Below, piece after piece: positions 30,401-55,158 of a stretch of 64,000 nucleotides of DNA (positions within the stretch are counted from its first letter, which is position 1; each line of letters begins with the position of its first letter). The notes under the pieces were generated by a model. That model was not told the origin of the DNA, did not search any database, and saw only the letters and a program-made list of their open reading frames with translations. The stretch is from Selaginella moellendorffii (lineage: Eukaryota; Plantae; Lycopodiophyta): positions 1,285,014 through 1,349,013 of the forward strand of contig NW_003314300.1 of assembly GCF_000143415.4 (NCBI RefSeq), read 5' to 3'. Made by a program: the position numbers and the translations under genes.

Positions 30401-32095
30401 ACTCAGTTGTTGCAAGACTCTTTAGGTGAGGTGCTACGAATACAACTGGATGTGCTTCTTACGTATTGCACGTTCTGCAGGCGGCCAAGCCAAAACGCTT
30501 ATGTTTGTGCATATAAACCCAGACGCGGACTCCTTTGGCGAGACAATGAGCACCTTAAAGTTTGCAGAAAGAGTGGCGTCGATCGAACTTGGAGCTGCTC
30601 GCTCTAACAAAGAGACCGGTGAATTACAAGATCTAAAAGAGCAAGTCAGTTCAAAAAAGAGAAACTTCTCTGCTCTAACGACTGTGCTGGTTTGCAGATC
30701 ATGATTTTGAAGGACTCCTTGTCCAAGAAAGATGCTGACCTTGACAAACTGCTTCTTTTGCGCAATGTAAAGGAATCAACGTTGGCTCTGGAAAAGCAGA
30801 GGCACGAGCCTAAGATTAGGAAGCAATTTACGGATACGTTCAAAGCTAGAGAGGTATGCCTCTAGCTTTATTGCAATGATTTTTCATTTACGTTACTTTT
30901 ATACAGAACTCTCCAGTTCGCGATCGTGCGAGACGCTTATCACCGCCTGGGAACACCTTTGGTTTTGAACTCGACAGAGTATCGTCTCCTTCTAAAGGTG
31001 ACATGGCCACTGAACAGCAGAAACGAAAGGGTATAAAACCGAAACTGCTGACGTCTCCAAAGCCTCCTTACGAGGATTTTGCGCCGAAGTCACCATACCG
31101 AGAAAGATATCACAAGTCCAGGAACTCTCAAAGTAAAACGAGGGGCTCCAGTGTGTTCTTGGTCGAATCACCTCCGTGTTTGGAGGAGAGGCGAAAGTCT
31201 CCGGATGTGGATGGATTCATAAATACGGAGGCAGAGCTCTCACGGGACTCCCCGGTTCTGTGCTCTCTGGCGTTCGACCCGGCTGTGGAAGAGCCGAGCA
31301 TATCTTACAGCACCGCAAACAATGAGCAGTATTCGTGTAACGATCCGAGCTTACCAGCCGTTACTGTTGTTGATCATCAGTCGGCAACGAGTAGTTCAGA
31401 CTTGAAGGACACATGCTCAGACGTGGTTGTGACGGACATGCCACCCAGTGATTGTGAGGCTGACAAGATCCAAAGAAGCGAGACAGTAGAAGAAAGAGTG
31501 GAGACCATATCTGAGACGGTATATGAGACTCAAACACCACAGTTGCAGAGAGTTGACGAGCAGCCGAGAGAAGAAAAACGGTCACAGAATCGGTAAGTAG
31601 CTATTCTTTTGCAATGCACAATGCAGTATTTAATCTAAGCTCTCCAGGTCTCGGACTGGTTCTACAAGGAGTCGAAAAGGTCAGTCAGTCTCTTGCGTGC
31701 GACGTCGATCCACCATAGTTACCTCGAGAACAGAGCCCCCAATCATCCGGAGGAGCTCAAGCTCAATTCCATGTAAGTTTTCCTTTTACGACCGTCTACT
31801 GTTTACGCATTAGCGTAGGCTCAAGCTGATTGTTGTTCCAGTGTCAGCAAGGCATACAACACTTGAATGTCATGGCCATGGAAAGCAAGCATTTTCCCGG
31901 CAGCTGCTTTCTATTGAAACTGGAATTTCTCCCAAAGCTTCCAAAAGGTGCACGTTCGTTTTGATTGATTCCGTCCATGCATCAGAAGCTTATAAGCAGT
32001 GTACTTTTTTGAACCATGGGTCCTAATCGCTTACGTATCAATGCAGATACCCTTGGATGGTGAAGCAAATCAAGCTTAGTGCGATGATTGCGTGA
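27418..32095 (+). CDS. Kinesin-14 with N-terminal calponin-homology domain (KCH type), many exons
   Basis: CH domain ([22 protein letters not shown]), neck [24 protein letters not shown]-loop [34 protein letters not shown]. The last exons and stop at 32095 are inferred from splice sites. Confidence 0.92.
29899..29953 (+). other. U12-type AT-AC intron in the kinesin-14 gene
   Basis: 5' site ATATCCTTT, branch point TCCTTTAC (29938-29945), 3' end CAC. Removal gives in-frame ...GPTKK/LEIRN... Confidence 0.88.
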
Positions 32096-33920
32096 TCGAA
32101 GAGAAAGAGCGAGGCCTCTTGAGCAGCGTGATGGTTCTCACTTTTTAAGGTGTCATTTAAGTTCTTTTGCCATTCGTTTTAGTATATGACAGTTTTGCAC
32201 GGCGTCTGCAGGCGGAGGCCATTTTTCCAGGCAGCTAGGAAGGCATTAATTTTCACGACAAATGTAACATATCTGTACACTGAAAATTCGGAGATGTTAA
32301 ATGTGAATCTTCACGATTTTGAGTCGGTATGTATGATACATAAGTTTGCTTGGTTGTGTGAGGCTTTGGTAACAACGGCAGAGCCCAAGTCCACTGGCTA
32401 CACTTATTTGTAAACCAGTGGGCACCCCACTTCTAAGCTCTCACCTTTCCATGCTTCCAGTGAGTGGGCAATCAGATGACTAACTAATTTCAAAAGGTTT
32501 TCAATGAGTTAAGCAAACTAAAATTCATACATAATGTAGTTTGTAAGCATTTAATTAAAGAGATAATTAGTTATAAAAGAAACTTCATATTAAACTGTAA
32601 TACAGATATATAATTAGTTTTAGCGAGATTTAAAATAGATTAGTTTTTTTTGTTTTTCTTAATGTGATCTAAAAAGTTAATTACAATTTTAAAATATAGT
32701 TTTCAAAATATTTTATCTATTTTGAAATATTTAAGAGACCCCTTCTAAATTTGATTAACTTGGTTTCGAGTGTGCTCAATTTTTTAAAGTAGCTAATATC
32801 ATATAAATAATACTACTTATCTTTTCAAACATATTACTTTAAGATAAGTTTTATTTCAAAACTAAATTAGCCATAAAATAAACTTTTTATGAATAAATGA
32901 TCATATCAGCTTTTAGTAGTACATAATAAGTATATAGAATTGTCACTAGCTATTAAATATATATTGGTATATAAATTTATTTTAAAAAAATTATTGTGCT
33001 AATAGGTATCACTTTGTCTTGGTTGATATAATATATCCCAAAGTGAGCAATTATAATATACATAGTTATTCTAATTTAGTTAAATCAATATAAGTTATTG
33101 GATAGAATATTTCTTACAATAGAAGCTTTACATATGAACTTTCATATTATTTAGTTTAGCATGCTAATAAGTTTACAAAAGTTTGTAAAAAAAACTCATC
33201 TTGACATCTTTATATTATGTGATAAATTCTATAAATATCACACTAAGTTTAGAAGCTTTATAAAAAAAATTTTGAAATAATAAGTTGAATTGCCATGATA
33301 AATTAATTAGGTCTTTGTAAGAACTTTGTATCATTTTCTCTTTAATTCTCCCATCCTTATCTATCCAGTAATATCAAAGTATCACAATAACATTATTAGC
33401 ACCAATATCAAAGTTATTCACTTTTAAAAAAGTAATTTCCTCCATAAATTAATTTTTTTGGAAGGAATTTCGTACATACAATTTAATTTTTTTATTTTTA
33501 TGTTTTTTTTATTTGCCAATACAACCTTCTAAGCACTTGGATTCATCAATTTTAATTAATCATATACAATCCACTGTATCTGTAAAGATCACAATTACTC
33601 ATTTAAAATTAATTTGTCATGACCAAAGAAATAAATAAAGTATGTTAAATAAGCAATTTCACCTATCACTTAATGCATTCACTAGTTGGCCACAGCCTAA
33701 TTATGGATTAAATAAATTAAACACTACACTTATAACACCCAAAATTAAATCAATATTAATAATGTTTAAATTAAAATCTAAATTTTGTCTCTTTTAATAT
33801 TGGGTTATGGAAATATCGTTTGGACAAGAAAAGCTCAATGATAGGAACTAAACTAAAACTTCATAAGTAATTAATTTTATTAGCTAATTTAATTTATTAT
33901 ATGTACAGCTATGGAACCCT

Positions 33921-35800
33921 ATGGATACAAAATGTTCAGTGATTTCCAGAGATATGATTATAGCTGAAGATGTTGATTGGACTCTATTGAGTGGCTCAAA
34001 ATTATTTATAGCTTATTTAGAATTCAAGGATATACCAAAGTTCAAGCAAAACAAATGTTTGGACATCAAATTAAAAACAAAACATCCACTAGGAGATATA
34101 ATAAGATTAATAGAATCAAGCTATCACACAATGATAGGGTATGATGTTACTTATTATACTTAAATCTCATTCTAATAAATAATTGTTATAAGTATTTATA
34201 TGAATATGACAAAGAAGATCACTGCCACACTTTTAAATTAGTTATACCTCTGAAATCTAAAACTTGGAAACAGTAAGAATCTAATAAATTGTTAAATAGT
34301 TTTACATATGGCTAGATTATACATAAATTATAGAGAACACTGTGATTTAGTAGGGATTCTATATCATGGTCAACTTGATCTTATTAGAGATGGATAATCT
34401 CTTTTACCATAAAAGCTCTCAATGGAGGTCTTTTATATGATCCAATAGGATCATACACCAAATTAAATTTATAATGATCACATAACTATGGTGGCTAAAA
34501 ATAAATTTATTAGTGATAGCATATATTGTGATGATTTCATGAGCTTCCAAGACATCAATAACTTATCAAAGAAGTATGCAACTTCATATAGCTATTGGTG
34601 TCATCCAAATGATGCTTAAAGCGTTTATATCTAGAAAATCTGCCAATCTAGAAAAAGTGTCTTTCTACCAAGAAAGGGATGGCATTTACATTTTGGAATT
34701 TAATCAACTTAGCAGTGTCAGAAAATGATTGAATATGGTTGTAATAGTTTATTTAGTTTGGGTGTTACTTTTGGAACCAACTGTTATAAGGTATAGTTGC
34801 AATGGTTAATAATATTTATAATTAATTAACCTGATATAGTTTACATTATATACCATCATTGTTTTCAATAACCACAATAGCAGTATCTCTATTGCTTGGA
34901 CGAACTTCAAGTGAGAAAGGACATTACATAATACAATGGATGCATGTATTGAAAGATCAAATTTTGGAACAAAATAATATTAGAAGCCAAATGTAGTAAT
35001 TGTTGATGATGCTGAAGATGAGAGAAATGCTATAAGTATGAATTATTATTATATAATTAATTATAATTTGAAGGCCACATTCAGATGTGAGATCATATTA
35101 TGTATATATGGCATAGTAAAAGAAACAGGTTGAAGCTTCTAATTTGGAAAGTCAAATCTTTTGAGACTCATATAAGAATGTGGACCAACTTGAGAAGTAA
35201 TATTCTATACTGTTTGTGGCACTTATTTTGATGTTGGAAAACTACAAGTGGAAGCTATAGAGCTGATTGAAAAGTTTGAAGTTTATGTCAAATATGAAAA
35301 AGCTTTTCTAAAATATTTTTGTATTGAATGAAAATACAAAGTTATATCATAATACTCTTGATTTTGAATAATTATTATCAGTGTGGGTTGTACTTGCACA
35401 AAACTTTCAACATGCAAATAGCTCAATTAAGGCTTTTCATGCTAATATAAAATATATCCTCTTAACTGAGAAATATAGTAGAAATAGAAGAATGGATTGG
35501 GTGAACTAGCTTACAATTGAAGTTTACTCTAAACATTGGTTTATACATTAGTGCAAGATTTATGGTTTTATTCAAAGCCTTAAACAATAAAAACTGATTG
35601 ACAATGCTATCATAAATGCTCTTTAGATTAGCAACTCTCCAAGTTAATTTTAATGTGAATAAACTTAACTTAACAAGCGTCTCTAACAAGAACAAGAAAG
35701 TTGTTATATTCAACCATCACATTTGAATGAAGCATGATATATCCTTACCACAACAAGATATGGAAATACTAAATCTGAAAGAGGTATTATAAAAATCTAA
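33921..35800 (+). mobile_element. Decayed Mutator-like (MULE/SWIM-type) transposase
   Basis: AEDVDWT..AYLEFKDIPKF, VTFGTN (~34765), VFNNHNSSISIAW, KPNVVIVDDAEDERNAI (~34985), C.WH, SIKAFHANIK, RRMDW. Resembles the At4g13970/At1g60560-type MULE domain. Many stops; no TIRs found. Confidence 0.65.
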
Positions 35801-37110
35801 AATAATTATTTAGAATTGAATATCTTTGTTTTGACAGAATGAAGAATTTCTAACACATGAACAATATACATGTGCTAGTGTTGAAGATACATTACATGTA
35901 TCAGAATCAAGAGTACAAGATGTTAGAGTATAGAAGATGGAATTTACTTAAGTTACCTAAGAGAAACTTTAATTGTTGATGATAAACATGCTTAATAAAA
36001 TTCCAAATAATGAAGTATTTATAGTTATGCAATGATTTAAAGATTTTGGATAAAAATATTGATACTTTTTAACCTAAACCAGAAGATTTTATTTATCTAG
36101 TGAAAAAATTCAAATAATGAGAAGATGGATATAGTACATCCTTAAAGCAAGTTAGACCCTTGGTCAAGAAGATTTATGGGAAAGAAAAAGCTAAAGTATC
36201 AATAAATGATACAACTCCCTTTAGTCAACCTAAGAAACTGAGGCATAAAAGTTATTTTCAAGGAGAATCTTATTTAATAATATAATATATAATTTTTTTA
36301 GGCTAAATAAAGTTTTATATACTGTTTTATAATGGTAAGAAAAATTTTACACCACTATAAGCTGCAAGTGACTGCCAGGATAAACCAAAATGCTTCACTT
36401 AGTATCTTACACTTAGAAAATTTTTGCTCATCAAAAGTGGCTAATACTTAGGCCAGTGGGCATGGTTCATGTAGAAGTTCCCATATACAGGCTTGCCCCT
36501 CAACCTATACTATCTTCTTCTCCCCCACCACATTTTGATATATCCTTGGCCACATGAGTTTTAATGTGGCAAAGACAATAAGATTCAACAGGAAACCCAG
36601 AATCCCAACCATGAATAGAATCTTAGACAATATATAATGCTCTTCACAACTACTATATTCAATCTACAGCCAAAGCCACCCAAAGTAGCACCATTGTTGA
36701 TAGTTAATTGAGGCCAGCAGCCATTGCCATAACTTCAGCCACTATCCAAGTTAGATCTAAAAAGTTGAATATACAATTAAATCTATACTATTGATAAAGT
36801 GCAAAGGAATTGATTGATAGTGTATCATGGCTTGATCTACAATGAAGTGGGGTTTTTGGCAATCAATCCATTGCAACTTGAGCATAATATATTTCACAAA
36901 AATATTGGTGGCAACTGAACCATCAACTCTATTTCTATCACTTCTGAGATTATATGTTTTGTTTTTTATATGAAAGTCATAGTTTATTCTTAACTTGGAA
37001 GGTATATATTATTTTTATAAAAAGAAATTCAAAGTCATAAAGTGCTGAAGTCAAAGTCTACTAGTTACTTTATATGACAATATAAATATCCCTATTTACT
37101 TCAATATAAT

Positions 37111-37575
37111 ATGGCTAAATATAGATTTAAATATTTCGTTTTTCTATTTATTTATTTAAATAGATATGTATTTTCAACTCAGGTATGTTGAAATTTCCAT
37201 AGGATATAATTAAATAATATTTTTTTATAGTGTAATTATGGAATAAATATAAAAACTGGTTGCAATCATAACGCAGGAACATATGCAAATATTGATATAA
37301 CACTTAGTTTTTCTTTTGGAACAATTTTAAATTTTCATGATATTGATGATAAAGATGATAATTTTGAAAAATGCCATACTGATTCATTCAATTATCTTAA
37401 AAAATGTCCGCTTCCCAAAGAAAGATTGTGTAAAATACATATACAACGAGATAATAATGGATTATACCCTAATTGGTTTATTGAAAGACTTTTAATTTTT
37501 AAAGACAACCATTTAATTGCAGAACTAAATATTGAAGCATGGATTAATACCGAGAACGAAGTACTACTATGTTAA
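37111..37575 (+). CDS. Secreted single-domain PLAT/LH2 protein (ATS3/PLAT-like), 2 exons, 138 aa
   Basis: Exon 1 37111-37182 (MAKYRFKYFVFLFIYLNRYVFSTQ), phase-0 GT-AG intron 37183-37230, exon 2 37231-37575: CNYGINIKTGCNHNAGTYANIDITL...DNFEKCHTDSF...CP...LCKIHIQRDNNGLYPNWFIERL...AWI...LLC*. TATAAATA at 37081. Confidence 0.85.
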
Positions 37576-49606: not shown

Positions 49607-52579
49607 ATGCATTTCAAGGAGCTGCTCAGGGCGCTGTGGAGCGATCGCGAGGTGTTTGCCACCGGAGGTGAGATCGATGGCAGCTCGTTCCAGATGCCAT
49701 CGTCGCTGCTCGTCGAAGGCGTCGGTAATGTCGAGCTTCCTCTCTCGCAAGAGGGTCTTGACAAGCTCAAGGCCGTGTCCCAGCAAGCCCCTTACGGACT
49801 TGGAGAGAGGACTGTGGTGGACACGGACGTGAGACGAGCATGGCAGATCAATCCCGGTCGAATCTCCTGCCCCGAAAATCCAAGGTTCTTTTCTTCTGTG
49901 GCTCAAGAACTCGCCGCCGCTGGGCTGGCCGCCATGGGACTCGACTCCAAAGCTCTGGAGCTCGACGCTAGGCTCTACAAGCTCCTCCTCTACGAAGCTG
50001 GCGGCCACTTCAAGTTCCACAGGGACACGGAGAAAGAGGGTGGCATGTTTGCGACGATGATCGTCCAGCTCCCTACGGCGTCTGGCCACACCGGAGGGGC
50101 TCTCACGGTTCGCCAGGGAAGGCAGTGCTCCAGGTTTGATTTCTCCGAGGGGAGCTCCGGCCGCTGCTTCTCGACGATTTTCTTTTGCGACTGCGAGCAC
50201 CAGCTTGAGAAGGTGGCCAGTGGATCGAGGCTGTGCCTGGTGTTTAGCCTGGTGAGGAACAACGTCGACTTCATACCGGCAGGGACGGTCCCCTCGTTCG
50301 TCTCCGCGTTGCCTCGAGTTAGAGCTCTTCTCCAGCAGTGGGCCGAGAGTGGAGATGGAGCAGCAGCCGAGAGTGGAGATGGAGCAGCTATGATAACGCA
50401 GCAAGACTACCGCCAACGAAATGAGAGACGTTTCGTTCGTGACAGGAAGCTTTTGGTGATTCCGCTGGCTCACAAGTACTCGAAGACGAGTCTCTCTTTC
50501 GCCGGGCTCAAGGGACACGACCGAGTGGTGGCAGCACTGGTGAGAGCTTGCGAGTTCCTGGATCTCCATCTGTGCATGCTCACCAAGCACAAGACCGTGA
50601 CGGATTACTTCCAGAACGAGTACGTGATCGATAACTGGCTCTCCATCGACGACCAGCCGGCCAAGTTCAAGCAGTGGCACATCGATTTCACGCGGCAGGT
50701 TCTCAGGTGTGCTCCACCGCCCGCAGGGATGATCATGGAGGACGAAGAGGCCGAGGGCGAGGTTGAAGACCAGAGGAACGAGCGGGACGTGTTTGATTTC
50801 ATCGAGGACGAGTTCCGCGGCACGGAGATGATGGCGGGCAACGAGGGTGGCAGCGAGCAGTACTTTTACCACGTCGCGGCGCTGGTGGTGTGGCCAAAGG
50901 TGGCGAGGAGCTCGACGATCTGCCCGTCGCTCGGGGACATCTCTTGGGTGCTCGAGTGGCTGCGGGAGATTTACGGGGACGAGTTCGCAGCTATGGAGGA
51001 GCCCCGGAGGTTCTTGGAAGAGGCAGTGGACGGGTTAACGCGGAAGTTCGCTTCGGTTGCTCCGTGGGGTCAAACGAGGCAGAACGACATGCACTGGCGA
51101 CTGGCAAGGAACATGAGCAAGAATTTCCAGGAACTCTATCGAGAGCCCGCGATGCTGCTCGAGCTGTGCGTGAAGTCGGGGCTTCGCGAGTCGGCCTTTG
51201 CGATCCTCAGGACCTGGGTGGCGGAGCTGATCAGTCTCGACGAGTTTGCGAGAGCAGTGCATGCCTACGGCTGGGAGGCGTGCCGAGAGATCGTGGAGAC
51301 GGCGCTCGTCGGCGTGTTTCACAGTGGATTCCTTCCGTGGAAGCTGCACCGCTGCGGATGCAACGACGGGGCGGTCGCGGCTGCCAAGCTGCTCTGCCGG
51401 AGCGTCGCCACCTCGGAACAGCCGCAGTACGGGCCAGCGCCATGGCAATCCATGGTCCGCCGCTTTGGCAGGGATAGCCAGGGGTTCCAGCCGGAAGGTG
51501 GTGTCCAGAGCCTGCTCGACTTTTGCCTCACCAACGGGCTCCGCGACGAGGCCTCCCAGATCCTTGGAAAGGTCCCCCTGGCGGTGCTGAGCTTCCGGAT
51601 GATGGCTATGGTGGTGCACCACTTCCCGGAGCGCATGAAGGAGGTGGAGGTCCTGTGGGAGGAGCAGAGGGTGGCGGTAAGCTCCAGTGATCCATCATCC
51701 CGCGATGCAAAGGCGAGCGAGATGAGGTTCATCGGTGGGATTCTCGAGTTCGCGCTGCAGCTGGAAGCTCTGGGACATCTGGAAGCGGCGCGGGCATTTG
51801 CGGCAAAGTCTTTGCAGCTGCCCGGCTTCCCAGAGAAGGCGGAGCAATACCAGCCCTGGCGGCAGTGGCTCGATGAACCCGACGTCATGCTGCTCATGCT
51901 GCTCGACAAGCCTGAGAACTTACGTGTGAGAACCAGCGAGCACTGTCGCGGTGAGGTGGTCAGGGCGATGCTAAGAGCTGGGCGATTGATGGGCTTGAAG
52001 GACAAGGCGGAGATGAAGCGGCTGTTTTGCGAGCTCTGCAAGGTGGAGCTTGCAGAGGTGATGGACAAGGCGGAGCTGAATTCCTGGGCCGGGGATCCAT
52101 CGCCCCTCAATCAGAAGGGCGAGAAGATCAGGCAGTTCACGACGTGGAAGAATTACATGACTTGGGCGGAGCAAAAGGAGTTCCTGGAGATGGCGCTGTT
52201 TTGGCTCGAGGACGAGGGAGTGCTCGACAGGGTGGTGGAGCTGGCGAGCAAGAGGATGAATATGGTGAAGAGGATGGTGGAGGAGGGATTTGTGGAGAAA
52301 GCGATCGCGAGCGGGATGGTTGGATCGAGGCACGCGATGAGGAGGCTTGTGGAGGCGAGGATGGAGTACCTGGCGAGGGAGCCGAGCATGGACGATGTGG
52401 AGGGGGATTTCCTGCCGCCGGCGTCCAAGGTGATGAGGATCTGTGGCGCGGTGGATGCGCGGCAGCTCGAGGATAATCCGCGGCAGCTGCGCCGGGCGCA
52501 CGAGATTGTGGTGGAGAAGTGGAGGGCGATTTGCAAGGATGAGATGGAGTCGCTTCGAGCCTTGAGAGAAATCCTTTGA
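49607..52579 (+). CDS. 2OG-Fe(II) dioxygenase-domain protein (fungal/bacterial type) with long helical C-terminus, intronless, 990 aa
   Basis: APYGLGERTVVDTDVRRAWQI, LYKLLLYEAGGHFKFHRDTEK (HxD), HTGGAL, DCEH (distal His), GSRLCL (2OG-binding Arg), L.HKYS..SLSF..LKGHD, GNEG..Y..AALVVWP. Confidence 0.85.
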   Translation: MHFKELLRALWSDREVFATGGEIDGSSFQMPSSLLVEGVGNVELPLSQEGLDKLKAVSQQAPYGLGERTVVDTDVRRAWQINPGRISCPENPRFFSSVAQELAAAGLAAMGLDSKALELDARLYKLLLYEAGGHFKFHRDTEKEGGMFATMIVQLPTASGHTGGALTVRQGRQCSRFDFSEGSSGRCFSTIFFCDCEHQLEKVASGSRLCLVFSLVRNNVDFIPAGTVPSFVSALPRVRALLQQWAESGDGAAAESGDGAAMITQQDYRQRNERRFVRDRKLLVIPLAHKYSKTSLSFAGLKGHDRVVAALVRACEFLDLHLCMLTKHKTVTDYFQNEYVIDNWLSIDDQPAKFKQWHIDFTRQVLRCAPPPAGMIMEDEEAEGEVEDQRNERDVFDFIEDEFRGTEMMAGNEGGSEQYFYHVAALVVWPKVARSSTICPSLGDISWVLEWLREIYGDEFAAMEEPRRFLEEAVDGLTRKFASVAPWGQTRQNDMHWRLARNMSKNFQELYREPAMLLELCVKSGLRESAFAILRTWVAELISLDEFARAVHAYGWEACREIVETALVGVFHSGFLPWKLHRCGCNDGAVAAAKLLCRSVATSEQPQYGPAPWQSMVRRFGRDSQGFQPEGGVQSLLDFCLTNGLRDEASQILGKVPLAVLSFRMMAMVVHHFPERMKEVEVLWEEQRVAVSSSDPSSRDAKASEMRFIGGILEFALQLEALGHLEAARAFAAKSLQLPGFPEKAEQYQPWRQWLDEPDVMLLMLLDKPENLRVRTSEHCRGEVVRAMLRAGRLMGLKDKAEMKRLFCELCKVELAEVMDKAELNSWAGDPSPLNQKGEKIRQFTTWKNYMTWAEQKEFLEMALFWLEDEGVLDRVVELASKRMNMVKRMVEEGFVEKAIASGMVGSRHAMRRLVEARMEYLAREPSMDDVEGDFLPPASKVMRICGAVDARQLEDNPRQLRRAHEIVVEKWRAICKDEMESLRALREIL

Positions 52580-52776: not shown

Positions 52777-53713
52777 ATGGAGGTGGGAGTGGAATGGGCG
52801 AAAGGCTTGAGTCAATACTCATGTTTAAATCCTCGCCATAGTACGCTGGGATTTGGAGCTCGCCATAGTACGCTGGGATTTGGAGCTCTCAAAGCGGACA
52901 GGAAAGTTATAAGTACCAGAAGTAGAAATTTTCATGCCAGGGTTGCGAGTGGAGAATCTCAAGGTAAATTTTCACTCGTATAGAAATTCTAGAAAGCTTT
53001 CTTTCACAATCGTTCAGTGGGGGAAGTGGATAGCAAAGTCGAGGAGAGCGTTCTGGTGCTAAAGGCCGCTGCCAAGAGCAAGAAAATCCCAGCTCCAGAG
53101 GTGTTTGCGGCATTTAGAGTTTTGGAGAAAGCCCGCGTGGATCCATCCAATTTTCTAGAGACTTTGGGAGGAAGTAGTGGAGCTGAGCCAAGGTGCTGGA
53201 TGCTTGTCTTCATTTGTGGAGCCAAAGCGGTAAGCAAACTTGTCACAAATCTAGAACTTTGCTCTTAATTTTTGCTTTCGATTTGAAGGTGAGAGAAGCT
53301 TTGAAAGGTGGTGGTGGAGGTGGCACATACTTCCCATTCACCGCTGTGCAGCAATACAATGCCACTGTAAGTTTCCAAAAGCTTTCACAAGGATTCGTCG
53401 TTAACAATGTGGATCATCGCAGACAAAGAGCATACTAAACGGGCTCTACCTCGGCCCTCTTGGTGTGCTAGAATTCATGGGACGCTTCTCATGGTCCAAG
53501 AACAAGCTCTTCTTCATCTTCGATTCCCTGAGCGTCAAGGTTGGGCCTCTCGGCCCCTTCCAATTCGCGATCAGCAAGAAAGAAGAGCTGGATCGAGAGC
53601 CCGGGAACAAAGATCCTTTCTTCATCTGGTTCTACGCGGACGAAGAAATCGTCGTTGGAAAGGGGTCAGGAGGAGGCATTTTTCTGAGGGTGCGTTGCAA
53701 TCGAAGAGTTTGA
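52777..53713 (+). CDS. Plastid-targeted At1g18060-like (fibrillin/PAP-like) protein, 4 exons
   Basis: Transit-peptide-like exon 1, then KAAAKSKK..EV..AF..LEKA.VDPS.FLETLGG, YFPFTAVQ, NGLYLGPLG, KDPFFIWFYADEEI. Confidence 0.8.
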
Positions 53714-53901: not shown

Positions 53902-55158
53902 ATGCTCGAGGCGAGCGCGTTGCCAGGTATGGATGTGGATCCACAGCCACAGCCAGCGCAGTCGTACCAGGCAGTGCGCCTGGCGCTGGCCGTTGCGATC
54001 GTCAAGTCCCGCGGCGGGGCGGATCGCGGTGGCATTGCGGCCAAGAAGCGGCTCAAGGATGAAATTTCGCTGCTCCGGAGCGAGATCGAGAGGTTGCGCT
54101 CCAGCTCCGCGGAGCCGCTGGTGCCGCGCGTCCTGTGCAAGTGCTTCACGGATTCTTCCACTCCGCCTCCTCGCCGGCAGCGAAATATCCTGGCGCAACC
54201 GGAGTTCCACGAGGAATCTGTCGCTCGCCTCATGGACTGCGTCCGATTCCTCAATGGCTGCAAGAAACGCCGCCTCCTCGATGCCGGCAACCAAGAACAG
54301 GACGAAGAGAGGGCTCGTCGTTTGACGGAGATGGCGAATCTCATCGTCGAGCTCGTGTCAAGTACGAACGTCCAGCTTTTCTCCGTGTGGCTCCACCAGG
54401 CTGTGGATTTCTTTGAGAGCTGCGTCTCCAGCATTGGCGGCGAGAGATTCTCCACGGCGGCCCAGAGCGCCACGAAGAGATTGGTTGGGAGCCTCGTCGG
54501 CAAGGTGATGAGCTTCACGGACTCGGCAGAGAAATCCAAGGACGAGGCTCTCAAGCTCGATCACAGGCCTTTCATCGAGAAGGTCCTCCTCCACCTCGCC
54601 GAAGTTCCTTGTATCGGCCACAGGATCCTGACCGACGTATCTGGCCAGCTCGCAGTCATCGCCGAGGCGCTGTCGCAGGCGAGAGATCCATTCGCGGAGG
54701 AGACCACCCAGCTGCTCGAGAATTCCTACTTTCTTCTCGAGCTCATCTCGAAGGTGCTGGATTTTCCCTTCACTGGCTGGCTGGAAAAGTCGAAGCTGGA
54801 TCCCGACTTGCTGGAAGAATTCGTGGCGGAGTTCTTCCGGACCAAGGAGGCCACGCTCCGATCCAACCGGCTAAACTTCCTCTTCGTCGCCTACACAGAT
54901 CGGATCTGTGCTCAGGTGGTGAAGCAGCTCCACTCGGTCTCGTCAAGTCCACAGTGCAAGGACGTGAAGCTGCAAAAGATCGTCGCCAGCTCTCTCCAGC
55001 GTCTCCTGGATCTGGCCTCGTTGAGCTTCCACAGTGGTAAGAAAGAGCTTAGAGCTCTCTTCTTAGGTCTAACGCCACTATCATTTCTTCAGCGAAGCGA
55101 TCGAACCAATGAAGCATCGCAGCCTTTCTCACGTAACTCCCACGATTTTGATTCCTAG
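53902..55158 (+). CDS. PRD2: PRD2/MULTIPOLAR SPINDLE 1-like meiotic double-strand-break protein (MEI4-related)
   Basis: RLALAVAIVKSR, CKCF, FSVWLHQAVDF, PCIGHRI, DPFAEE, FVAYTDR occur in the same order as the recalled AtPRD2 motifs (RLAIAVSLLRSK, CKCYF, FSNWSHQAVDF, PFIGQRA, DPFDE, YMDR). A possible small terminal intron begins at ~55037. Confidence 0.8.
   Translation: MLEASALPGMDVDPQPQPAQSYQAVRLALAVAIVKSRGGADRGGIAAKKRLKDEISLLRSEIERLRSSSAEPLVPRVLCKCFTDSSTPPPRRQRNILAQPEFHEESVARLMDCVRFLNGCKKRRLLDAGNQEQDEERARRLTEMANLIVELVSSTNVQLFSVWLHQAVDFFESCVSSIGGERFSTAAQSATKRLVGSLVGKVMSFTDSAEKSKDEALKLDHRPFIEKVLLHLAEVPCIGHRILTDVSGQLAVIAEALSQARDPFAEETTQLLENSYFLLELISKVLDFPFTGWLEKSKLDPDLLEEFVAEFFRTKEATLRSNRLNFLFVAYTDRICAQVVKQLHSVSSSPQCKDVKLQKIVASSLQRLLDLASLSFHSGKKELRALFLGLTPLSFLQRSDRTNEASQPFSRNSHDFDS

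What the first reader, a model, noticed from the sequence alone, without database searches (positions are those of the whole stretch)
49607..52579. Intronless 990-aa 2OG-Fe(II) dioxygenase of fungal/bacterial type: horizontal-transfer candidate
Seen: a single exon with intact HxD...H and Arg catalytic residues. From recall, the motif set (APYG.G..T.VD..VR, LYKLLLY..G.HF..H.DTEK, L.H.Y...L....LKG.D, GNEG) marks an uncharacterised family common in fungi, oomycetes, bacteria and some invertebrates. It is not one of the usual plant DOXA/B/C classes and I do not recognise it from angiosperms. It sits between ordinary plant genes, which argues against contamination. Substrate unknown.
Basis: partly seen in the sequence, partly recalled or inferred. 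Interest (0 to 1): 0.7.

Follow-up and report, generated by a model that had tools for sequence, protein, structure and literature searches.

The report
Old land-plant oxygenase gene, not transferred
This is an intact, so far unannotated spikemoss gene for an iron/2-oxoglutarate oxygenase of unknown substrate; mosses, liverworts and ferns carry it too, so it was inherited from the first land plants and later lost in seed plants, not recently taken from a microbe.

Summary
Window 49607-52579 (+) is one uninterrupted 990-codon ORF (chance of no stop about 2e-16). It keeps the HxD...H iron triad, the 2OG-binding Arg and all 25 residues conserved across the family. The genome is Selaginella moellendorffii. 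The gene has host-like GC3 and lies among ordinary plant genes, and neither this protein nor anything more than 52% identical is in the public protein sets.

The transfer reading is only partly supported. The family also occurs on large nuclear scaffolds of a liverwort (Calypogeia), a moss (Ceratodon) and a fern (Adiantum). In an ML tree the plant copies split into bryophytes (94/97) and tracheophytes (98/90, fern next to 9 Selaginella copies), as the species tree predicts. Their nearest relatives sit on eukaryotic contigs (diatom-like, chytrid-like). Grouping Selaginella with bacteria and mushroom fungi is rejected (AU p 0.003). Any transfer would predate land-plant diversification. No seed-plant or streptophyte-alga copy was found.

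Architecture: a prolyl-hydroxylase-like catalytic domain (Z 14.8 to 4iw3), a conserved 220-aa domain with no match in PDB, and a fast-evolving C-terminal region predicted to be helical. Most likely it is a soluble protein hydroxylase; the substrate is unknown. The scan had already noted paralogues elsewhere in this genome.

The parts
49607..52579 (+). Complete single-exon CDS, 990 aa plus stop: long 2OG-Fe(II) oxygenase, not annotated in public protein sets
   Evidence: ORF. End-to-end alignment to Selaginella paralogue P0001. The exact sequence is absent from the 15-billion-protein collection, and the best hit is only 50% identical.
49646..50266 (+). Catalytic double-stranded beta-helix domain (aa 14-220), prolyl-4-hydroxylase-like
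   Evidence: AlphaFold model pLDDT 87.9, pTM 0.86. VIA-align Z 14.8 to P. putida P4H 4iw3 and Z 14.1 to Trichoplax PHD 6f0w. Foldseek E 4.5e-9 to 6n1f. PF13640 match at aa 125-212.
50018..50026 (+). H138-R139-D140: the HxD part of the iron-binding facial triad
   Evidence: H in 102 of 104 sequences and D in 102 of 104.
50198..50230 (+). H198 (distal iron ligand, invariant) to R208 (2OG C5-carboxylate-binding Arg, 102 of 104)
50342..50388 (+). Perfect in-frame 24-bp tandem duplication (AESGDGAA twice, aa 246-261) in the low-confidence linker between the two domains
   Evidence: Tandem Repeats Finder: 2.0 copies, 100% match. pLDDT is 51-64 at aa 251-270.
50267..50926 (+). Family-specific second domain (aa 221-440) with conserved H289, Y291, K302, D305 (invariant), G411-N412-x-G414, Y421 and W429-P430; no known fold match
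   Evidence: Model pLDDT 81.4, pTM 0.79. Best PDB match is only Z 3.5 and Foldseek E 0.2. The profile finds no PDB sequence. In the ESM Atlas it matches only clusters of this family. Residues.
50927..52576 (+). C-terminal region (aa 441-990), Leu/Glu/Ala/Arg-rich; its first ~155 residues (window 50936-51400, including AYGWEAC at 51266-51283) are homologous to the moss/liverwort/alga C-terminal region, and the rest is Selaginella-specific
   Evidence: hhalign A2 vs A4: probability 95%, E 3e-8. A4 vs bacterial A3: probability 95%, E 4e-8 over 330 columns. A2 vs A3 is not significant. No Pfam or PDB match. Composition. The structure was not modelled.
48944..49354 (+). Three dispersed copies of a 38-nt motif ending GGCATTGCCTTAAAA, directly upstream of the start codon; role unknown
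   Evidence: the repeat finder family D1; sequence read.
49568..50872 (-). 434-aa antisense ORF: a shadow of the GC-rich coding strand, not a gene
   Evidence: Listed. It overlaps the conserved sense CDS completely, and all homology is on the + strand (tblastn).

Best explanation
The ORF is an intact, previously unannotated paralogue of an old land-plant gene family in Selaginella moellendorffii. The family was already present in the common ancestor of bryophytes and vascular plants. It was then inherited vertically, lost in seed plants (and apparently in some bryophytes), and multiplied in Selaginella to at least 13 distinct loci. The protein is a soluble three-part enzyme. Part one is an N-terminal Fe(II)/2-oxoglutarate oxygenase domain of the prolyl-4-hydroxylase (PHD/PPHD) structural type with a complete active site. 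Part two is a tightly conserved second domain of unknown fold, predicted to pack against the first. Part three is a rapidly evolving C-terminal region, probably helical. The inferred mechanism is as follows: Fe(II) is held by H138, D140 and H198, and 2OG by R208; O2-dependent decarboxylation of 2OG then hydroxylates a residue, most likely proline, of a protein substrate. That substrate would be recruited by domain 2 and/or the C-terminal region. The fold, the active-site residues, the architecture and the phylogeny are shown. Catalysis, the class of substrate and expression are inferred.
For: The ORF is intact, with all 25 family-conserved residues kept on a terminal branch of 0.15 substitutions per site. 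The host genome is identified and composition is host-like. The catalytic domain is closest to protein prolyl hydroxylases. The joint two-domain model has pTM 0.86. There is no N-terminal hydrophobic segment (highest 19-residue hydropathy in the first 60 aa is 0.68). Homologues lie on large nuclear scaffolds of Ceratodon, Calypogeia and Adiantum. In the careful IQ-TREE (LG+C20 PMSF, 58 rows) tracheophytes score 98/90, bryophytes 94/97, and bacteria + Agaricomycetes 100/99 on the far side. The 98-row quick tree and the 321-row FastTree show the same picture. In AU tests land-plant monophyly is not rejected (p 0.44-0.49), while Selaginella with bacteria and mushroom fungi is rejected (p 0.002-0.003). 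The architecture is inherited as a whole, from bacterial through moss to Selaginella C-terminal regions. There are 15 annotated Selaginella proteins with 29-96% pairwise identity.
Against: The gene is missing from public annotations, which could mean it is silent. No biochemical data exist for any family member, and no paper on the family was found. Structural similarity to prolyl hydroxylases does not fix the substrate, since small-molecule oxygenases (PiuC, PolD, SnoK) also score Z 11-13. Land-plant monophyly is not positively resolved: plants and a diatom-like group form an unresolved three-way split inside a 96/96 clade. No copies were seen among named hits from Physcomitrium, Marchantia, hornworts or streptophyte algae, so several losses must be assumed. 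The AU tests used LG+F+G4 on trees from unfinished searches.
Confidence: 0.72

Rival explanations
1. One reading: a lineage-specific horizontal transfer from bacteria or fungi into the Selaginella (lycophyte) line.
For: The gene is intronless. The family is abundant in bacteria and fungi/oomycetes. It is absent from named seed-plant hits.
Against: Moss, liverwort and fern copies group with Selaginella in species-tree order. A Selaginella + bacteria + Agaricomycete grouping is rejected (AU p 0.002-0.003, delta lnL 59). GC3 equals that of the neighbours. The gene is also a single ORF in the diatom-like, chytrid-like and bryophyte-type contigs, so lacking introns says nothing about recency.
Confidence: 0.03
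2. A single ancient eukaryote-to-eukaryote transfer into the stem of land plants, with a donor resembling a zoosporic fungus or a stramenopile, followed by vertical descent. This is compatible with the best explanation for everything after the land-plant ancestor.
For: The nearest non-plant relatives are on two contigs. One has a Vps41 65% identical to the monoblepharid fungus Hyaloraphidium. The other has a diatom-type ferredoxin-nitrite reductase at 78-83% identity. Together they form a 98/96 clade with land plants. Putting land plants with the green-alga copies (Ostreobium P0020, and P0156, which is sister to the Gonium pectorale protein P0188) costs 47 lnL units, AU p 0.04. No streptophyte-alga copy was found.
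Against: Deep nodes are weak (53/86) and the tree is unrooted. The AU result is marginal and comes from a simple model. Ancient paralogy with differential loss gives the same pattern. The direction of any transfer is unknown.
Confidence: 0.3
3. The enzyme acts on a small molecule (a metabolite hydroxylase, desaturase or similar) rather than on a protein.
For: Small-molecule 2OG oxygenases also match the catalytic domain at Z 10-13: PiuC 9qn0, PolD 9blq, SnoK 5epa, HrmJ. The family has expanded and diverged in Selaginella, as specialised-metabolism genes often do.
Against: The top structural matches are protein prolyl hydroxylases (4iw3 Z 14.8, 6f0w Z 14.1). The long C-terminal region, probably helical, and the extra domain look more like macromolecule-recognition parts. 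There is no conserved biosynthetic neighbourhood in 80 bacterial loci or in this window.
Confidence: 0.25
4. This copy is silent or on its way to becoming a pseudogene, intact only because inactivation is recent.
For: It is not annotated in any public protein set. Other scan notes report broken copies of the family in this genome (s1-355706; s1-423078). A perfect 24-bp duplication sits inside the ORF.
Against: The ORF has 990 codons with no stop or frameshift. All 25 conserved residues are kept after about 0.15 substitutions per site on its own branch, which would happen by chance about 2% of the time (my estimate). The duplication is in frame and lies in a disordered linker.
Confidence: 0.15

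Closest known systems
Selaginella moellendorffii SELMODRAFT_403360 (P0001, 1029 aa) and about 14 other annotated paralogues
   Same: Same three-part architecture end to end. The N-terminal module is 67-70% identical and all catalytic residues are shared.
   Different: Only 49-52% identical over the full length, on a different scaffold. The window's copy is a separate old paralogue that is absent from the protein sets.
Bacterial ~770-aa '2OG-Fe(II) oxygenase' proteins (for example Thiocapsa roseopersicina P0064, and Halochromatium, Thiocystis, Variovorax, Planctomycetota)
   Same: The same 430-aa two-domain N-terminal module at 29-35% identity, with the same conserved motifs.
   Different: The bacterial C-terminal region ends in a Cys-rich CxCxxC segment and a TKNQASYERR-type tail. 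This tail is still recognisable in mosses but not in the Selaginella clade. Bacteria form a separate clade (100/99 together with Agaricomycetes).
Protein prolyl hydroxylases of the PHD/PPHD type (P. putida PPHD 4iw3, Trichoplax PHD 6f0w, human PHD2, Dictyostelium PhyA-type 6t8m)
   Same: Best structural match for aa 14-220 (Z 12.4-14.8). HxD...H triad and basic 2OG-binding residue. Soluble, with no membrane anchor.
   Different: Only 12-16% identity and not detectable by sequence (best E 0.04). Those enzymes are 200-250 aa single domains, while this protein adds a 220-aa unknown domain and a 550-aa tail. The substrate is unknown.
Plant DOXB-class prolyl 4-hydroxylases (hydroxyproline-rich glycoprotein P4Hs; algal Cr-P4H 2jij/3gze)
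   Same: Same superfamily and the same Pfam clan domain. Structural match at Z 10.5.
   Different: From established knowledge, DOXB P4Hs are about 300-aa ER/Golgi type II membrane proteins found in all land plants. This protein has no N-terminal hydrophobic anchor, is 990 aa long, carries extra domains and is missing from seed plants.
OGFOD1 / Tpa1 / Ofd1 ribosomal prolyl hydroxylases (4nhx, 4nhk, 6e0t)
   Same: A catalytic DSBH followed by a second large domain. Z 10.1-11.7 over the catalytic domain.
   Different: Their second domain is itself a DSBH-like fold. Domain 2 here matches neither it nor anything else in PDB (best Z 3.5).

Membership tests
2OG-Fe(II) oxygenase superfamily (DSBH fold; Pfam PF13640 2OG-FeII_Oxy_3) | HxD/E...H iron-binding facial triad | tested here: met
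   H138, D140 and H198 are present and are 98-100% conserved in 104 relatives.
2OG-Fe(II) oxygenase superfamily (DSBH fold; Pfam PF13640 2OG-FeII_Oxy_3) | Basic residue binding the 2OG C5 carboxylate, about 10 residues after the distal His | tested here: met
   R208, present in 102 of 104 sequences, Lys in the other two.
2OG-Fe(II) oxygenase superfamily (DSBH fold; Pfam PF13640 2OG-FeII_Oxy_3) | Double-stranded beta-helix fold | tested here: met
   Predicted model (pLDDT 87.9) aligns to many solved 2OG oxygenases at Z 9-14.8 over aa 14-220. This is a prediction, not a solved structure.
2OG-Fe(II) oxygenase superfamily (DSBH fold; Pfam PF13640 2OG-FeII_Oxy_3) | Score above Pfam's gathering threshold | tested here: inconclusive
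   26.4 bits against a cut-off of 27. Homologues from bacteria, moss, algae and fungi pass with 28-35 bits.
Long two-domain 2OG oxygenase family (unnamed; bacterial ~770 aa, eukaryotic 720-1400 aa) | 430-aa N-terminal module with the conserved motif set (APYG.G, LYKLL.Y, HRDTEK, EH.Y, LKG.D, GNEG, WP) | tested here: met
   All 25 most conserved columns carry the consensus residue. phmmer E-values to relatives run from 1e-38 to 1e-236.
Long two-domain 2OG oxygenase family (unnamed; bacterial ~770 aa, eukaryotic 720-1400 aa) | C-terminal region homologous to that of other members | tested here: inconclusive
   The first ~155 residues match the moss/alga profile (probability 95%). The remainder, and the Cys-rich bacterial/moss tail, are not detectable in the Selaginella clade.
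Plant DOXB prolyl 4-hydroxylases | N-terminal signal anchor (type II membrane protein of ER/Golgi) | tested here: not met
   Highest 19-residue Kyte-Doolittle score in the first 60 aa is 0.68.
Plant DOXB prolyl 4-hydroxylases | Orthologues throughout land plants, including seed plants | tested here: not met
   Named plant hits are limited to Selaginella, Ceratodon, Calypogeia and Adiantum. A joint tree with true DOXB P4Hs was not built.
Horizontally transferred gene (recent, lineage-specific) | Nested with support inside a donor clade and absent from the recipient's relatives | tested here: not met
   the gene groups with bryophyte and fern copies, and the grouping with bacteria and mushroom fungi is rejected.
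Horizontally transferred gene (recent, lineage-specific) | Composition or codon usage unlike the host | tested here: not met
   GC3 is 0.77, against 0.68-0.83 for five neighbouring coding regions.

The most novel reading that the evidence does not exclude
The family is a new class of two-domain Fe/2OG oxygenase. Its second domain (aa 221-440) would be a new fold with its own near-invariant His-Tyr-Lys-Asp-Asn set, serving as a built-in substrate-recognition site or a second catalytic site. The land-plant branch would have been seeded by one eukaryote-to-eukaryote transfer (chytrid-like or stramenopile-like donor) at the origin of land plants, and later discarded by seed plants.
Probability: 0.2. 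Interest if true: 0.6.

Novelty: new member of a known kind. Interest (0 to 1): 0.33.

Why it matters
The result removes a false lead. This gene is not a recent microbial import into a vascular plant. It is a member of a gene family that the first land plants had and that seed plants lost. The result also adds an unannotated, apparently functional gene to the Selaginella gene set. Finally, it points to a large enzyme family that nobody appears to have characterised: at least 561 bacterial species and 585 cluster representatives at E <= 1e-30. The family spans diatom-like, chrysophyte, green-alga, chytrid-like, mushroom and non-seed-plant sequences, and its conserved second domain has no solved or named relative. 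The substrate of a prolyl-hydroxylase-like enzyme kept for over 450 million years in spore-bearing plants but dispensable in seed plants would be worth finding. As a horizontal-transfer case it is weak.

Tried and rejected
2. Bacterial gene context: ORF clustering over 80 GTDB loci found no recurrent neighbour gene. The only recurrent cluster was opposite-strand shadow ORFs.
3. Defence-system link: PADLOC matched only its generic '2OG' model. NCBIfam gave nothing.
4. Giant-virus vector idea: an IMG/VR scan found only 2 contigs, at 31% identity. Rejected.
5. Known fold for domain 2: Foldseek against PDB, VIA-align wide and a PDB profile search were all negative. An OGFOD1/Tpa1-like second DSBH is therefore rejected.
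6. C-terminal region: no Pfam or PDB sequence match.
7. Fusion partners as functional hints: Selaginella P0010 has a GT8 domain in front, and Gonium pectorale P0188 has a Vid24/GID4 domain behind. Both are multi-exon gene models that may join neighbouring genes, so they were not used as evidence.
8. The careful IQ-TREE run on 98 rows and treekit's mixture-model AU test did not finish on the single CPU available. I used a finished careful tree on 58 rows, and AU tests under LG+F+G4 on trees from unfinished or short searches.
9. Literature: six searches found no paper on this family and one paper was checked. Ma et al. 2022 is not in the library.
10. My first guess that the window was not S. moellendorffii, because the best hit was only 50% identical, was wrong.
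Full report
OBSERVATION. The ORF listing gives one uninterrupted ORF at 49607..52579 on the + strand: 990 aa, starting at the first start codon after the preceding in-frame stop. With the base composition of this stretch, 990 codons without a stop are expected with probability 1.7e-16. The 434-aa ORF on the opposite strand (49568..50872) is a shadow of the GC-rich coding strand. tblastn finds no second copy in the window. Pfam gives only PF13640 (2OG-FeII_Oxy_3) at aa 125-212, with 26.4 bits against a cut-off of 27. NCBIfam gives nothing.

HOST AND CONTEXT. The neighbouring ORFs are a PPR protein, a WD40 protein and a WAK-type receptor kinase (GUB_WAK plus kinase exons). The WD40 ORF is an exact match to a database protein on a 1.7-Mb contig. 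Its 90% cluster mate is Selaginella moellendorffii XP_024516122.1, so the genome is S. moellendorffii. Earlier scan notes had suggested this, and I tested it here. GC3 of the ORF (0.77) lies within the range of the neighbours (0.68-0.83). The 990-aa protein itself is not in the 15-billion-protein collection. Its best hit in both protein searches is only about 50% identical over the full length. So this copy is not represented in public annotation.

THE FAMILY. The word search found 12 S. moellendorffii paralogues, then Ceratodon purpureus (moss) and Calypogeia fissa (liverwort). After these came many unnamed metagenome proteins and about 770-aa bacterial '2OG-Fe(II) oxygenases', which share the first ~430 residues at 29-35% identity. 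The exhaustive HMMER search found 5293 cluster representatives at E <= 1e-3 and 585 at E <= 1e-30. Naming of the top hits added two more Selaginella proteins, the fern Adiantum nelumboides (P0134, P0268), another Ceratodon protein and the chrysophyte Pedospumella. P0020 is from the green alga Ostreobium. The ESM Atlas lists related clusters dominated by Oomycota, Basidiomycota and Ascomycota. No seed plant appears among the named hits.

ANATOMY. An alignment of 104 N-terminal modules (A1) shows H138, D140, H198 and R208 as invariant or nearly so. A second block of conserved residues lies beyond the catalytic domain: H289, Y291, K302, D305 (invariant), G411-N412-x-G414, Y421 and W429-P430. The window's protein has the consensus residue at all 25 of these columns. 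AlphaFold2 with that alignment gives a confident model of aa 1-440 (pLDDT 87.9, pTM 0.86).

Residues 14-220 form a double-stranded beta-helix. Its best matches are protein prolyl hydroxylases: Pseudomonas putida PPHD 4iw3 at Z 14.8 and Trichoplax PHD 6f0w at Z 14.1, with PiuC, 6n1f, Dictyostelium PHD, Tpa1/OGFOD1 and others following.

Residues 221-440 were modelled separately (pLDDT 81.4). They have no significant match in PDB (best Z 3.5, Foldseek E 0.2, no profile hit). In the ESM Atlas they match only clusters of this same family.

The C-terminal 550 residues have no Pfam or PDB match. Profile-profile comparison shows that the first ~155 of them are homologous to the C-terminal region of the moss/liverwort/alga proteins (probability 95%, E 3e-8). 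That region is in turn homologous along its whole length to the bacterial C-terminal region, including a Cys-rich tail (probability 95%, E 4e-8). The Selaginella tail has diverged beyond recognition from the bacterial one. So the whole three-part architecture was inherited as a unit. The protein has no N-terminal hydrophobic segment, so it is probably soluble. This differs from the membrane-anchored plant DOXB prolyl hydroxylases, a point that rests on established knowledge. A perfect in-frame 24-bp tandem duplication (AESGDGAA twice) lies in the low-confidence linker.

PHYLOGENY. I extracted the N-terminal module from 321 proteins with a profile HMM. A FastTree puts all named land-plant sequences in one 38-row clade, together with some unnamed metagenome sequences. 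A quick IQ-TREE (LG+C20 PMSF) on 98 rows and a finished careful IQ-TREE on 58 rows by 437 columns agree on the following:
- Nine Selaginella copies form a clade (100/100).
- They join the two Adiantum proteins and P0136 in a tracheophyte clade (98/90).
- The Ceratodon and Calypogeia proteins, plus unnamed sequences, form a bryophyte clade (94/97).
- These two clades and a three-member group (P0186, P0140, P0144) form a 96/96 clade whose internal order is unresolved.
- P0139 is the next branch out (98/96).
- The 12 named bacteria and two Agaricomycete proteins form a separate 100/99 clade.

P0139 lies on a 35-kb contig with Nol9, Vps41 and WDR5 genes. Its Vps41 is 65% identical to that of Hyaloraphidium curvatum and 43-47% identical to chytrid Vps41 proteins, so the contig comes from a zoosporic fungus. 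P0186 lies next to DCP1 and a ferredoxin-nitrite reductase that is 78-83% identical to diatom enzymes. P0140's contig carries RING and ankyrin fragments. P0188 is from Gonium pectorale (assembly LSYV; PMC4844696). The nearest relatives of the plant clade are therefore eukaryotic.

AU tests (LG+F+G4, 10,000 RELL replicates, trees from unfinished or short searches) gave three results. Land-plant monophyly costs 2.7 lnL and is not rejected (p 0.44-0.49). Selaginella grouped with bacteria and Agaricomycetes costs 59 lnL and is rejected (p 0.002-0.003). Land plants grouped with the green-alga-type sequences P0020, P0156 and P0165, to the exclusion of the diatom-like and chytrid-like ones, costs 47 lnL (p 0.04).

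INTERPRETATION. The gene was present before bryophytes and vascular plants split, and it has followed the species tree since. Its absence from seed plants is a loss. Its abundance in Selaginella (15 annotated proteins with 29-96% pairwise identity, plus this copy and the broken copies noted elsewhere by the scan) reflects duplication and decay within the genus. A recent or lycophyte-specific transfer from bacteria or fungi is rejected.

How the land-plant ancestor obtained the gene is open. One possibility is descent from an older eukaryotic gene with paralogy and many losses. The other is one ancient transfer between eukaryotes. The placement next to chytrid-like and diatom-like sequences rather than chlorophyte ones, and the lack of identified streptophyte-alga copies, lean slightly towards the second.

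FUNCTION. Nothing is known experimentally for any member, and I found no paper on the family. Bacterial loci show no conserved neighbours. PADLOC matches only its generic 2OG model. Viral contigs are essentially devoid of the family. On structure alone, the most likely activity is Fe(II)/2OG-dependent hydroxylation of a protein residue, most plausibly proline. Domain 2 and the C-terminal region would serve in substrate recognition. I give this about 0.4 against about 0.25 for a small-molecule substrate, with the rest open. Two gene models fuse the module to other domains: GT8 in Selaginella P0010, and Vid24/GID4, a receptor for N-terminal proline degrons, in Gonium P0188. Both are multi-exon predictions that may merge neighbouring genes. 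I treat them as leads only.

The sandbox had one CPU, so the larger careful tree and the mixture-model AU test did not finish. No spliced model was needed because the gene is a single exon.

VERDICT. The gene is a new, unannotated member of a known but uncharacterised family. Interest is modest and rests mainly on the unexplored enzyme family and its unknown second domain.

Noticed in passing
window 50342-50388: Perfect 24-bp tandem duplication inside the ORF. It is in frame, encodes AESGDGAA twice, and lies in the poorly modelled linker between the catalytic domain and domain 2, so it looks like a very recent slippage event.
   Followed up: partly
window 48944-49354: Three copies of a 38-nt motif ending GGCATTGCCTTAAAA, spaced 263 and 110 bp apart, directly upstream of the start codon. 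This could be a promoter-proximal repeat or the remnant of a small element.
   Followed up: no
window 52832-52888: Perfect 27-bp tandem repeat (2.1 copies) about 250 bp downstream of the stop codon.
   Followed up: no
window 32001-40000: An AT-rich stretch (GC 0.26-0.33) between gene-rich GC 0.5-0.6 blocks. An earlier first-reader note (s1-355647) places a low-GC PLAT/LH2 ORF at 37081-37575.
   Followed up: no
window 44861-47221 (-): WAK-type receptor kinase in two long ORFs: the GUB_WAK_bind part at 46262-47221 and the kinase at 44861-46057.
   Followed up: no
L092:3001-7729 (S. moellendorffii GL377565.1), protein P0010: The annotated 1342-aa model joins a glycosyltransferase family 8 domain to a paralogue of this oxygenase. 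It is either a real fusion or two neighbouring genes merged by the annotator.
   Followed up: partly
L091:6001-14225 (Gonium pectorale LSYV01000010.1), protein P0188: The green-alga family member is modelled with a C-terminal Vid24/GID4 domain (PF09783), the receptor for N-terminal proline degrons. This is a suggestive partner for a prolyl-hydroxylase-like enzyme, but it may be a gene-model fusion.
   Followed up: partly
proteins P0017, P0018, P0019 (metagenome contigs, e.g. L088:999-3665): This bryophyte-clade subgroup has lost iron ligands in some members (H138 to L in P0017, D140 to I in P0018) on a long branch of about 0.8. It may contain non-catalytic or decaying copies.
   Followed up: no
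ESM Atlas cluster, row 3: A 229-aa haptophyte-dominated cluster matches domain 2 alone (TM 0.58/0.56). It is either a free-standing version of the unknown domain or made of fragments.
   Followed up: no
window 53902-55158 (+): 418-aa ORF with host-like GC3 (0.735) and no Pfam match, directly downstream. It is probably an exon of an uncharacterised plant gene.
   Followed up: no
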